Below are positions 47,001-62,553 of a stretch of 64,000 bases of DNA, one piece after another (positions within the stretch are counted from its first letter, which is position 1; every line of letters starts with the position of its first letter). The position numbers and the translations under genes were made by a program. Source of the DNA: Diadema antillarum (Eukaryota). Below the pieces are notes generated by a model. The model was not told the DNA's origin and ran no database searches. It worked only from the letters and a program-made list of their open reading frames with translations. The stretch lies in NCBI RefSeq assembly GCF_040938485.1, contig NW_027270964.1, positions 5,022,001 to 5,086,000 of the forward strand, in the 5' to 3' direction.

Positions 47001-50000
47001 TTTACGAGAAATGTCACTTTTGTCACTTGCTTCCTTTTGCCGAAGTAGGGCAGAAAGGTTTTTAACTTTCCTGGCAGTCCTTTGTCCACCCAAGGGACTT
47101 TTTAATGGTATCAAAATCGAATTTGAAATTTCATAAAGACACGCCGTAGATCTATGTGAAATGTCGGGGAGCGTATACCATATAGCTCATAAGATGAAAA
47201 GAATGAAACGGCTCATCCTTTGTGATGAGAAATTTTATCGTCATACTGATGGACACTCCGACCTTCTTCCCGTTCCATTATTGTGATGTAAGGTATCCAG
47301 TTAGTCTTCTAGCTGCAATGAAAGCAAAGAGTTGAGAGGAGTATTAGACATATCATGATGCCAAGGAGAGAAAGTGATCGAGGGGGGGGGGGGGGACGGA
47401 GCGAACGGGCTCTGAGTAGACAGCGTATGCAAGGTTGTTCCATCCAGGACTCCTAGAACCTTGCTTTCACATTGTCTGCCAGACTCTTCTATTTCGGGAG
47501 ATCTTGGAAGCTGGAAATCCGATGTCTCGAGAAAGCGACACATGATCTCCAGAATTAGCCAAGCAAGGAAAATGGAGATGGGGTCTGGTGATCTCAGCAT
47601 CCAGTGAAGATGCGCTGACTGGAACCAAGACAATGTTCTTACTTCCTTCTTGTAGTACCTCATTATATGTTATAAAATTCTCTTGTAAGAGTAGCACATT
47701 TTCGTAATATTCATTGGTGAATTGTCTCGGGAGAATATGTGTTTGTTTGGGGTGTATTTCTTTCAGGGTCTTTATGACTGTGTAATGGGGAAATTCTATG
47801 ATTAGAAATGCACACATTGTATTCTACAAATTATATAGACGTGACCTATTTTCTACCTTTTGATGCAGTCTTACGTAGTCATTCCCCATCGTCACAACTG
47901 ATTAAGTAGTACATACATAGACTGTCATTTTCTCGGAATGTGCTATTTATTTCGTCTTTTCTGCCTCTCCTTTGTTCACAGAGCTGCCAGTATTGTCCCG
48001 GCCACCAGAGGTTAGAAGCATTGGAAGCACGTGGGCCGAACTGTCTTGGCACGCCTGGACCTCCGGGGTAGACATCGGTGACGGCCCGGTCATTGCCTAC
48101 CGCGTCAAATACAAAGAGCAAGGAACAGCCGACTGGCAGATGGCCGATACCGTGACGTCACAACCACCTTTGACCCTGAGAGTGACGCCACTGGAGAGTC
48201 GATTGGTCTATGACTTTGCTGTGGTTGCCATTAGACCTGGTCCTGGAGGGGAAGGGACGGGAAGTCATGTGGTTTCTGCCAGGACCAGTTGTCCAGGTGA
48301 GTATTCATTTGTCCTGGAGATGGCTTTCATGAATGATAGTCCTGGTATTATCGGCCCCTAAAACGACACGAACTGCAAAGTGGATGTAGGCCATTATCGT
48401 TCATTTCTTTTTCTAATTCTTCTCATTGATTTTAAACTTGAAATAAAAACTTCCAATAATGGTGATAAGAATTTGATTTTTTTATTTCTTTCTTATGTCG
48501 ATTGCCAGCTTTCGCACGTACCAGTCGAATTAGAGATGGAGAAATACGAATATCTATCTTTGGGCTCCCTTCCATTTTCTCTAACTTTATCATGAAATCA
48601 CTTTCAGTTTTGCTTTGTAAGCTGCTGTCACCTTGACTTCGTCTTTTGTTTAGTTGGAGGGAAAAGGGAATGTTCCTGTATTTCGTCTTGATCTCGCCTA
48701 CGTTGATATTTTCTGGCAAAGACAATTTCCCGCCGGATGACATTTAGCCTTTATTCAAGGACTCACCAGCAGCAGTTAACGCTGAACATCATTGTCCCAT
48801 CCAAGCGTTGGAATCGCATCGATCTACTTGCAGTGTACCAATCGTTTTCAGTGTGTCATTTGGGGTCGGTGAAAGAAAATGGCTATTCAGAGGAGAGCGT
48901 GGCTGAGAACGTCTTGATTAAAATCTAGGTGTCAATGAACTCCCGTTATGAATAATCGTTGCAAGTTCGCTTAAGAGCAAAAACTGGTCATGCATGTGGT
49001 CTTGCGTTGGATTACTCCTCCGTGTTCTATGAAAGCAGAGTACTTTGTCTTTAATCTTTAGATATCAGTACCTGACAAACAGAATTCCGTGTGGGCTTTT
49101 GGGAGAGAAAGAGCAAGAGAAAGGATTAGTTTTTTCTTCGTTCCTTCCTATACAGTAATGCTCTCCAGAATTATTATCAGTTATCTGAGAGAGTTTATCA
49201 TCCGACGCGGCAAATTTTGAGAGAAAACATTGATTCAAGTACAGGTGTATCCCTAATTTCAACTATATTTCAAAGACTTAGCAAAGAGAGCAGCTGATAG
49301 CAAACTGAAATAGTCTATGAAGCCCTTATGATGACAGATTTCACAATCAATATGGTATTAGTATTGACCACCCACCAGCTTACGTCACTGATTTCTCTTG
49401 TCTCCACAGCTCCTGATCCTGTTCCTGGCCTCCAAGTATCGGCAATAGAGGGCGCTTCGAGGTCGCTTCACGTGACTTTGGAACCAACTCTGGAAAGGAG
49501 ATGCCAAGTAGACCACTACATTATTCATTACGTTGTCAACAGACTTGATCAGTGTCGTGACGTTACCACGCCTCAATTGAATGACACAAGCCTATTCGGC
49601 TTCTTTAACACAACGGAAAAGAGTGTCATTATCTCGAACCTTCATGAATATTCAACGTATAGAGTGACAGTCACACCAGTGAAGGGCAGAAACCTAGGAC
49701 AAAATACAACAGCCTTGGGAACAACTGGAGGAATCAGTAAGAACCACTTCCCGCCTACCCCAGAATACCTTTCTTTTTCGCTGAATTCCCCCTTTTGCCC
49801 ATTTCGTTTTTCTTACCTGCTTCTTCTTATTTGACCTCTTCTGCTTTCTTTTTTCTTAACGATGAAGACATATGGAGATGTAAATGACGTTTGGTACACC
49901 TTATCGAGGGGAAATGAAGTGCACTGTAATCATAAAAGCGTGGCTTTTAGCGTCTAAGGTGAACTCTGCTAAATTGTGCACAACAGGTGAATACCGTGCC

Positions 50001-62553: not shown

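What the first reader, a model, noticed from the sequence alone, without database searches (positions are those of the whole stretch)
47982..62553. FN3 array appears stapled by a chain of 10 inter-domain disulfides, which would form a rigid Tie-headed stalk
Seen: FN3 domains are usually Cys-poor, but Cys counts for FN3-1 to FN3-12 are 1,2,2,2,2,2,2,2,2,2,1,0 (FN3-12 only partly present). Each of FN3-2 to FN3-11 has a Cys in the loop between strands B and C (RRCQ, VPCG, SACP, LQCG, VSCP, LECG, LPCP, VPCG, QKCP, PPCG). The second Cys alternates between the CC' loop (DQC, DQC, GMC, DQC, DRC) and the EF loop (LECT, AACT, MPCE, EPCE). Established: in the FN3 fold the BC loop is at the N-terminal pole, while the CC' loop, EF loop and C-terminus are at the opposite pole, so the two Cys of one domain are too far apart to pair. 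Inference: each bottom Cys pairs with the top Cys of the next domain. The edges match this exactly. FN3-1 has a single C-terminal Cys (RTSCP) to partner FN3-2. FN3-11 lacks the EF Cys (LIPFTEY), and FN3-12 correspondingly lacks the BC Cys (WSKPDPPHG). This predicts a covalently locked multi-domain rod (tens of nm) holding an Ig-EGF Tie-type head away from the membrane, which could serve as a molecular ruler, size-exclusion element or mechanosensor. I know of no description of this arrangement but cannot exclude one.
Basis: partly seen in the sequence, partly recalled or inferred. Interest (0 to 1): 0.82.

Follow-up and report, generated by a model that had tools for sequence, protein, structure and literature searches.

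The report
Disulfide-stapled FN3 stalk of a phosphatase
A sea-urchin receptor phosphatase with a Tie2-like head has eleven fibronectin-III domains whose cysteines look paired across each domain junction, an arrangement I found described nowhere, but the bonds were not shown physically.

Summary
Fourteen GT-AG exons (47982-62553, + strand) splice into a 1200-aa open frame. It is identical to residues 456-1655 of a Diadema antillarum protein named 'receptor-type tyrosine-protein phosphatase delta-like' (P0164, 2634 aa).

In 23 non-redundant relatives, 126 domain junctions carry both a C-pole Cys in domain n and a BC-loop Cys in domain n+1. Twenty-nine junctions carry neither, one carries only the first, and none carries only the second. 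The relatives cover all five echinoderm classes plus amphipods, a wasp, a tick and nematodes.

Arthropod and nematode arrays contain one-Cys domains that occur only as such cross-junction pairs. In an AlphaFold2 model the two Cys of one domain flank a full-length beta-strand, so they cannot pair with each other.

The protein has a Tie2-like head but two phosphatase domains, not a kinase. Rigidity and function are inferred. I found no published description or solved structure, and the scan had not noted this elsewhere.

The parts
37688..38020 (+). Head exon: Ig-like domain 1 (P0164 residues about 28-138). Bounds are approximate.
   Evidence: tblastn of P0164 on the window; ORF.
38300..38563 (+). 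Head exon: Ig-like domain 2. Bounds are approximate.
   Evidence: tblastn; weak Pfam Ig_3/Ig_2 hits; aligned to the Tie2 Ig2 region.
40320..40454 (+). Head exon: EGF-like repeat 1. Bounds are approximate.
   Evidence: Pfam EGF_laminin and EGF_2; aligned to Tie2 EGF1.
43877..44031 (+). Head exon: EGF-like repeat 2. Bounds are approximate.
   Evidence: ORF matches the P0164 sequence; aligned to Tie2 EGF2.
45495..45632 (+). Head exon: EGF-like repeat 3.
   Evidence: tblastn at 100% identity; aligned to Tie2 EGF3.
46227..46517 (+). Head exon: Ig-like domain 3.
   Evidence: tblastn at 100% identity; weak Pfam ig hit.
47982..48296 (+). FN3-1, the chain starter. Its single Cys lies 2 residues before the domain end (codon 48290-48292, P0164 C558).
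49410..49736 (+). FN3-2, type A. BC-loop Cys at 49502-49504 (C591) and CC'-loop Cys at 49553-49555 (C608).
50378..50555 (+). FN3-3 first exon, type B. BC-loop Cys at 50458-50460 (C696). The donor is corrected to 50555.
52208..52320 (+). FN3-3 second exon. EF-loop Cys at 52227-52229 (C735).
53638..53937 (+). FN3-4, type A. Cys at 53721-53723 (C794) and 53769-53771 (C810).
54525..54821 (+). FN3-5, type B. Cys at 54599-54601 (C891) and 54731-54733 (C935).
55308..55625 (+). FN3-6, type A. Cys at 55400-55402 (C996) and 55451-55453 (C1013).
55944..56234 (+). FN3-7, type B. Cys at 56021-56023 (C1097) and 56144-56146 (C1138).
57216..57530 (+). FN3-8, type A. Cys at 57302-57304 (C1197) and 57353-57355 (C1214).
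58305..58613 (+). FN3-9, type B. Cys at 58391-58393 (C1302) and 58523-58525 (C1346).
58946..59260 (+). FN3-10, type A. Cys at 59038-59040 (C1407) and 59089-59091 (C1424).
60039..60329 (+). FN3-11, the chain terminator. BC-loop Cys only, at 60119-60121 (C1508). The EF-loop position is Phe.
60898..61004 (+). FN3-12 first exon. No Cys.
62428..62553 (+). FN3-12 second exon. No Cys. The domain and the gene continue beyond this point and off the window: further FN3 domains, the transmembrane segment and two PTP domains.

Best explanation
What the stretch encodes. It encodes the FN3 stalk of a Diadema antillarum receptor protein-tyrosine phosphatase (P0164). The protein has a signal peptide, a Tie2-like Ig-Ig-EGFx3-Ig head, at least 13 FN3 domains, a transmembrane segment and two PTP domains.

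Proposed bonding. FN3-1 to FN3-11 are joined by ten disulfides, one at each junction. Each links a Cys at the C-terminal pole of domain n to a Cys in the BC loop of domain n+1. The C-pole Cys sits in the C-terminal tail of FN3-1, in the CC' loop of 'type A' domains, and in the EF loop of 'type B' domains. Types A and B alternate, so there are two alternating junction geometries.

Consequence (inferred). The bonds make a continuous covalent path through the array that uses only 16-17 residues of each type A domain (strand C) and 39-44 residues of each type B domain. This should lock the inter-domain hinges. It should also cap force-induced extension far below that of an ordinary FN3 chain.

Overall picture (inferred). 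The result would be a stiff, roughly 40-nm stalk that holds the head away from the membrane. The last membrane-proximal FN3 domains are left unstapled.

Status of each step. Shown here: the gene model, the domain identities, the Cys positions, their conservation and their cross-junction co-occurrence. Inferred: that the bonds form in cis, that the stalk is stiff, and what the stalk is for.
For: Gene and protein. The spliced product is identical to P0164 456-1655. Pfam finds fn3 (442 bits) and Y_phosphatase (495 bits, 2 stretches). The head matches the Tie2 ligand-binding region 2gy5 at E = 4e-33.

Co-variation across the whole set. Among non-redundant FN3-array proteins, 141 junctions have both Cys, 25 have the bottom Cys only, 2 have the top Cys only and 1023 have neither (Fisher p = 6e-154; the junctions are not independent).

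Co-variation within the family. In the 23 family members the counts are 126 both, 29 neither, 1 bottom only and 0 top only.

Chain patterns. In the following strings c is a domain with only a C-terminal Cys, A and B are the two types, D is a domain with AB-loop plus BC-loop Cys, t is a domain with only a BC-loop Cys, and a dot is a Cys-free domain. P0164 reads cABABABABAt.., P0165 reads c?BABABABA?ABABAt.., the Patiria kinase P0167 reads cBABAtcBABAt., and P0105 reads DADADADAAt.

One-Cys domains. They occur only as cross-junction pairs: the amphipod proteins P0030 and P0228 read tbtbtb, the wasp P0023 reads atat, and the tick P0070 reads ctat (lower-case a and b are domains with only the CC' or only the EF Cys).

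Prediction test. A BC-loop Cys in the first detected domain predicted a Cys at the end of the preceding, undetected segment. That Cys was found in P0076, P0080, P0110 and P0016.

Position matching. The BC Cys lies 10 residues before the strand-C Tyr when the preceding domain's bottom Cys is in the CC' loop. It lies 5 residues before that Tyr when the preceding bottom Cys is in the EF loop, AB loop or C-terminal tail. This includes 3 'cB' cases where the domain's own type would predict the other position.

Orthologues. All 20 Cys are invariant in Diadema, Strongylocentrotus and two Lytechinus sequences at 59-61% identity.

AlphaFold2 model of FN3-8 to FN3-11 (pLDDT 90). Cys 29 and Cys 46 flank strand C (residues 33-42). 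Cys 134 lies in the BC loop and Cys 178 in the EF loop of the next domain.

Precedent for the contact. In tandem Ig-like sandwich domains, the AB and EF loops of one domain contact the BC loop of the next (PMC11926128).
Against: No bond or S-S distance was observed. The structure tool returns no coordinates.

AlphaFold2 pTM does not distinguish the stapled array (0.59) from a Cys-free tenascin-like array (0.65). The modelling therefore gives no support for extra rigidity.

Co-occurrence cannot tell bonds within one chain from bonds between two parallel chains.

Many junction counts come from tandem duplicates and paralogues, so the p-value overstates the independent evidence.

Thirty-three family junctions were set aside because a neighbouring domain had extra or unclassified Cys.

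No solved structure has the same Cys pair. No PDB array shares the four-domain geometry (best query-normalised TM-score 0.50). CC'-to-BC contact in FN3 tandems therefore has no experimental precedent that I could check.
Confidence: 0.78

Rival explanations
1. The same Cys positions pair, but between two parallel, in-register receptor chains. The bottom Cys of domain n in chain 1 would bond to the BC Cys of domain n+1 in chain 2, giving a covalently laddered dimer or lattice rather than a stapled monomer.
For: Presence/absence co-variation is equally compatible with cis and trans bonding of the same two positions. Receptor phosphatases and Tie receptors are known to dimerise (own knowledge).
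Against: Both Cys lie at the same junction of one chain, so the cis bond is the geometrically simplest. Ten trans bonds would need a perfectly in-register, intertwined dimer. Short fragments with one or two junctions in other phyla keep the same rule.
Confidence: 0.07
2. The two Cys of each domain pair with each other, BC with CC' or BC with EF, as ordinary intradomain disulfides.
For: Most FN3-2 to FN3-10 domains have exactly two Cys. This is the usual signature of an intradomain bond.
Against: FN3 topology and the DSSP strand assignment of the model place the two Cys at opposite poles. They are separated by a full 10-residue strand C in type A, and by strands C, C' and E in type B. This pairing would leave FN3-1 and FN3-11 with unpaired Cys. 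One-Cys domains in amphipod, wasp, tick and nematode arrays cannot pair internally, yet they follow the cross-junction rule. The BC Cys position tracks the preceding domain, not the domain's own second Cys.
Confidence: 0.03
3. Some or all of these Cys are free thiols or labile, redox-regulated bonds. The pattern would then be kept mainly by tandem duplication of an A-B unit rather than by a structural need.
For: The array clearly grew by duplication of A-B units: chain length ranges from 6 to at least 16 domains among paralogues. Duplication copies Cys whatever their use.
Against: All 20 Cys are invariant across urchins at about 60% identity. The pattern is kept in all five echinoderm classes. 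Chain ends are always matched. Twenty exposed free thiols in a secreted ectodomain would be highly unusual (own knowledge).
Confidence: 0.05

Closest known systems
Tie2/Tie1 angiopoietin receptors (ligand-binding region, PDB 2gy5, 4k0v)
   Same: The Ig-EGFx3 part of the head aligns with Tie2 residues 76-319 at E = 4e-33. FN3 domains follow the head.
   Different: Tie receptors have 3 FN3 domains and a tyrosine kinase (own knowledge). I know of no FN3 disulfides in them, also from memory. This protein has at least 13 FN3 domains, 11 of them in the Cys chain, and two PTP domains with no kinase hit.
Classical receptor PTPs with FN3 ectodomains: the LAR/PTPRD/PTPRF family, and FN3-only R3 types such as PTPRQ and VE-PTP
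   Same: It has a tandem D1-D2 phosphatase module and an FN3 array. The nearest solved FN3 domains by sequence and fold are LAR and PTPRD. NCBI names it 'phosphatase delta-like'.
   Different: LAR, PTPRD and vertebrate PTPRQ FN3 arrays lack the coupled Cys. PTPRQ, cnidarian and mollusc LAR-like proteins parse as almost entirely Cys-free. None of them has a Tie-like head.
Insulin receptor alpha-beta disulfide between FnIII-2 and FnIII-3 (from memory, not checked here)
   Same: It is a disulfide that links two neighbouring FN3-type domains of a receptor ectodomain.
   Different: It is a single bond that holds two furin-cleaved chains together. It is not a repeated junction staple running through an array.
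Tenascin-type Cys-free FN3 arrays
   Same: It has head-to-tail FN3 domains with 1-2 residue linkers. AlphaFold2 confidence is similar (pLDDT 94.6, pTM 0.65).
   Different: None of its 37 domains has a Cys. Such arrays are the textbook extensible FN3 chains (own knowledge). The array here would be their covalently locked counterpart.
Covalently stapled beta-sandwich rods such as the isopeptide-bonded Ig-like domains of Gram-positive pili, and the rigid CD45 ectodomain (from memory, not checked)
   Same: The proposed effect is the same: extra covalent bonds or tight junctions turn a chain of sandwich domains into a stiff, force-resistant rod.
   Different: The chemistry and placement differ, because isopeptide bonds lie inside single domains. 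The organisms differ and there is no homology.

Membership tests
Fibronectin type III domain (Pfam PF00041) | Profile match above the curated cut-off | tested here: met
   Nine of ten single-exon domains score 30-48 bits against a cut-off of 25. FN3-1 scores 24.4 bits. The whole protein scores 442 bits over 12 stretches.
Fibronectin type III domain (Pfam PF00041) | Seven-strand beta-sandwich, A-B-C-C'-E-F-G | tested here: met
   The AlphaFold2 model of FN3-8 to FN3-11 has pLDDT 90 and six to seven DSSP strands per domain in the expected order. Foldseek top hits are FN3 arrays.
Tie receptor tyrosine kinases | Ig-Ig-EGFx3-Ig ligand-binding head | tested here: met
   phmmer against PDB gives Tie2 2gy5, 9lv4 and 4k0v at E = 4e-33, covering Ig2 and EGF1-3. 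Exons for Ig, Ig, three EGF repeats and Ig are present.
Tie receptor tyrosine kinases | Cytoplasmic tyrosine kinase domain | tested here: not met
   P0164 has no kinase hit. It has Y_phosphatase at 495 bits in two stretches. A starfish relative, P0167, does carry a kinase.
Classical receptor-type PTP with tandem D1-D2 | Two PTP domains with the HC(X5)R motif after a transmembrane segment | tested here: met
   Pfam PF00102 matches in two stretches. VHCSAGVGRTG in D1 and an HC(X5)R motif in D2 can be read in P0164. This part of the gene lies outside the window.
R3 receptor PTPs (VE-PTP, DEP-1, PTPRQ) | FN3-only ectodomain and a single PTP domain | tested here: not met
   There is a Tie-like head before the FN3 array and there are two PTP domains.
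Proposed class: FN3 junction stapled by an inter-domain disulfide | A C-pole Cys in domain n co-occurs with a BC-loop Cys in domain n+1 | tested here: met
   All 10 junctions from FN3-1 to FN3-11 carry both Cys, and 2 of 2 later junctions carry neither. Family-wide the counts are 126 both, 29 neither and 1 mismatch.
Proposed class: FN3 junction stapled by an inter-domain disulfide | The two Cys are actually bonded, within one chain | not testable with these tools
   Structure prediction returns no coordinates and no model file appears in /data. No solved homologue has these Cys.

The most novel reading that the evidence does not exclude
A disulfide 'spine' threaded through successive FN3 junctions is a general and ancient device of invertebrate receptor ectodomains. 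It is complete in echinoderms and present at alternate junctions in some arthropods and nematodes. It would turn the normally extensible FN3 chain into an almost inextensible, hinge-locked rod. Echinoderms mount the same stapled, Tie2-like ectodomain on both a tyrosine kinase and a tyrosine phosphatase, which would give opposed receptors that share one ligand-binding geometry.
Probability: 0.45. Interest if true: 0.7.

Novelty: new variant of a known kind. Interest (0 to 1): 0.62.

Why it matters
FN3 arrays are the standard example of elastic, bead-on-a-string protein modules, and they are normally free of disulfides. A natural design that bolts each junction with one bond would be a new structural principle for this very common fold.

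It gives clear, cheap predictions. These include a non-reducing gel shift, defined linked peptides, and contour-length steps of at most about 2 nm (type A) or about 11 nm (type B) instead of about 28 nm in force spectroscopy.

It could be copied to build stiff FN3 spacers.

It also bears on how the size and stiffness of receptor-phosphatase ectodomains matter for signalling.

Finally, it exposes an unrecorded receptor type: a Tie2-like head on a phosphatase, with a kinase twin in starfish.

Tried and rejected
1. Measuring SG-SG distances. The AlphaFold2 job gave a confident model, but no coordinates are returned or stored, so the decisive in-silico test could not be run.

2. Using pTM as a proxy for junction rigidity. 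The stapled FN3-8 to FN3-11 segment gave 0.59. A Cys-free tenascin-like four-domain control, built the same way, gave 0.65. The measure does not discriminate and I dropped it.

3. Looking for a solved precedent. phmmer of a type A and a type B exon against PDB found no FN3 with the Cys pair. Integrin beta-4 has a BC-loop Cys only and is cytoplasmic. Foldseek against PDB gave only generic FN3 arrays, with query-normalised TM-score at most 0.50.

4. Literature. Eight full-text searches on inter-domain disulfides in FN3 arrays, receptor phosphatases, sea urchin and CD45 found no description. The CD45 ectodomain paper is not held.

5. My first donor site for FN3-3 (50534) was in frame but wrong. 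The annotated protein uses 50555.

6. Searching from an amphipod relative for a model-organism orthologue returned mainly vertebrate PTPRQ, which lacks the pattern.

7. A profile query for the one large HMMER search was rejected in favour of a single exon, to avoid swamping by titin-like proteins.
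Full report
**What is there**

The + strand from 47982 to 62553 carries 14 exons. All have AG/GT boundaries, and the FN3 exons are phase 1-1, so most domains are one exon each. My first splice of FN3-3 used an in-frame donor at 50534. The annotated protein uses the next donor, at 50555, which adds 7 residues.

With that correction the product is 1200 aa with no stop and is identical to residues 456-1655 of P0164. P0164 is a 2634-aa NCBI protein of the sea urchin Diadema antillarum named 'receptor-type tyrosine-protein phosphatase delta-like'.

Upstream exons in the window (37688-46517) encode Ig, Ig, three EGF-like repeats and Ig. This head aligns with the ligand-binding region of Tie2 (PDB 2gy5, 4k0v) at E = 4e-33.

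The rest of the protein is encoded beyond the window. It has further FN3 domains, a PTPRU-type FN3, a transmembrane segment and two PTP domains (Pfam Y_phosphatase, 495 bits, two stretches). There is no kinase. 'Tie-type head' is therefore right, but the receptor is a phosphatase.

**The observation**

Pfam fn3 matches every single-exon domain, although FN3-1 falls just under the cut-off. The array holds exactly 20 Cys, and their codons are located.
- FN3-1 has one Cys, two residues before its end.
- FN3-2 to FN3-11 each have a BC-loop Cys.
- FN3-2, 4, 6, 8 and 10 ('type A') have a second Cys 16-17 residues later, just after strand C.
- FN3-3, 5, 7 and 9 ('type B') have a second Cys 39-44 residues later, in the EF loop.
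- FN3-11 has only the BC Cys.
- FN3-12 and FN3-13 have none.

This is far from the norm. In 131 unrelated FN3-array proteins from the same search, 71% of 1748 domains have no Cys, and only 7 show either two-Cys pattern.

**Can the two Cys of one domain pair?**

I modelled FN3-8 to FN3-11 (P0164 1169-1577) with AlphaFold2, using an alignment of 38 four-domain windows from the family. The model has mean pLDDT 90.

Its DSSP strand assignment puts Cys 29 four residues before strand C (33-42) and Cys 46 four residues after it. In the next domain, Cys 134 lies between strands B and C, and Cys 178 lies between strands E and F.

By FN3 topology these are opposite poles, about one domain length apart. 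Intradomain bonds are therefore excluded on geometry. The partner at hand is the Cys across the junction.

Contact of the AB and EF loops of one sandwich domain with the BC loop of the next is a documented arrangement in tandem Ig-like domains (PMC11926128). I could not measure S-S distances, because the tool gives no coordinates.

**Co-variation**

One HMMER search of 1.84 billion representative proteins with the FN3-10 exon, plus two word-based searches, gave 339 proteins. I cut them into FN3 domains with a profile built from the window's exons. I then classed each Cys by loop.

*Junction counts.* Across non-redundant proteins, junctions with a C-pole Cys in domain n and a BC Cys in domain n+1 number 141. 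Junctions with the bottom Cys only number 25, with the top Cys only 2, and with neither 1023. The junctions are not independent, so the Fisher p of 6e-154 is only descriptive. Within the 23 family members the counts are 126 both, 29 neither, 1 bottom only and 0 top only, with 33 set aside for extra Cys.

*Notation.* In the pattern strings below, c is a domain with only a C-terminal Cys, A and B are the two types, and t is a domain with only the BC Cys. Lower-case a and b are domains with only the CC' or only the EF Cys. D has an AB-loop plus a BC-loop Cys, and a dot is a Cys-free domain.

More telling than the counts are five kinds of natural variant.
1. Every complete chain starts with c and ends with t. 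The starfish kinase P0167 has two such chains in a row, cBABAtcBABAt, with no Cys on either side of the t-c junction.
2. Amphipod proteins read tbtbtb, a wasp protein atat, a tick protein ctat.cta, and nematode proteins at and ct. These are domains with a single Cys, always arranged as a cross-junction pair.
3. In the brittle-star proteins P0105 and P0072 the bottom Cys has moved to the AB loop, another C-pole loop, and the next BC Cys is kept.
4. Where the first detected domain had a BC Cys, a Cys was found at the end of the preceding, undetected segment, in P0076, P0080, P0110 and P0016.
5. The place of the BC Cys depends on the preceding domain. It lies 10 residues before the strand-C Tyr after a CC' Cys, and 5 residues before it after an EF, AB or tail Cys. 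This includes three 'cB' cases that break the A/B confound.

All 20 Cys are invariant in four sea urchins at 59-61% identity.

Full chains occur in echinoids, asteroids, ophiuroids, holothurians and crinoids. Vertebrate PTPRQ, coral and mollusc LAR-like proteins lack the pattern.

**Mechanism**

The best reading is ten cis disulfides, one per junction, from FN3-1 to FN3-11. They would form a covalent path that uses only strand C of type A domains and the C-C'-E stretch of type B domains.

From this I infer locked hinges and a hard limit on force-induced extension. A 17-residue span that already crosses the domain can lengthen by about 2 nm. A 42-residue span can lengthen by about 11 nm. An unstapled FN3 lengthens by about 28 nm.

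The result would be a stiff stalk of about 40 nm carrying the Tie2-like head, with the last FN3 domains left free as a base. Stiffness and purpose (spacing, size exclusion, force transmission) are not shown. AlphaFold2 pTM gave no help here, at 0.59 against 0.65 for a Cys-free tenascin-like control.

Bonds between two parallel chains at the same positions cannot be excluded by co-variation.

**Known or new**

No solved FN3 shares the Cys pair. No PDB array shares the model's four-domain geometry. Eight literature searches found no description. The scan's own notes hold nothing similar.

The nearest precedent I know is the single alpha-beta bond between two FnIII domains of the insulin receptor (from memory).

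I rate this a new variant of a known kind. The domains, the head and the phosphatase are all ordinary. The repeated junction staple, and the Tie-head-on-phosphatase architecture, appear unrecorded.

Noticed in passing
window 61211-61282 (- strand), in the intron between the two FN3-12 exons: ARAGORN calls a tRNA-Gly(TCC) gene here. It is probably a tRNA-derived repeat.
   Followed up: partly
P0167 and P0056 (Patiria miniata; contigs of the same recorded length, 46,651,055 bases): A receptor tyrosine kinase (P0167) and a receptor phosphatase (P0056) share ectodomains that are 73-78% identical, including the Tie-like head and the stapled FN3 chain. This is a kinase/phosphatase twin pair with one ectodomain design.
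   Followed up: partly
window 50534 and 50555: Two in-phase GT donors lie 21 nt apart at the end of the first FN3-3 exon. Either gives an open frame. The annotated protein uses the distal one. Alternative use was not examined.
   Followed up: no
P0105 and P0072 (Amphiura filiformis): A variant of the chain in which every second domain carries its C-pole Cys in the AB loop instead of the EF loop. The pattern reads DADADADAAt.
   Followed up: partly
P0003 (7306 aa, 59 detected FN3 domains): Nearly every FN3 has two Cys 4-12 residues apart (mostly 6-8) within the CC' loop region. This is a different, apparently intra-loop, Cys pattern repeated about 50 times.
   Followed up: no
P0070 residue about 1507 (Ornithodoros turicata): This is the only family junction with a bottom Cys and no partner. 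A recent duplicate of a one-Cys domain has Cys where its sister copy has Arg in the EF loop. It may be a polymorphism or a sequencing error.
   Followed up: no
window 4190-4348, 7071-7243, 27388-27549; 51594-51842: Three runs of N, left untouched. A long trinucleotide microsatellite in the FN3-3 intron reads as poly-Ser or poly-Leu in different frames.
   Followed up: no
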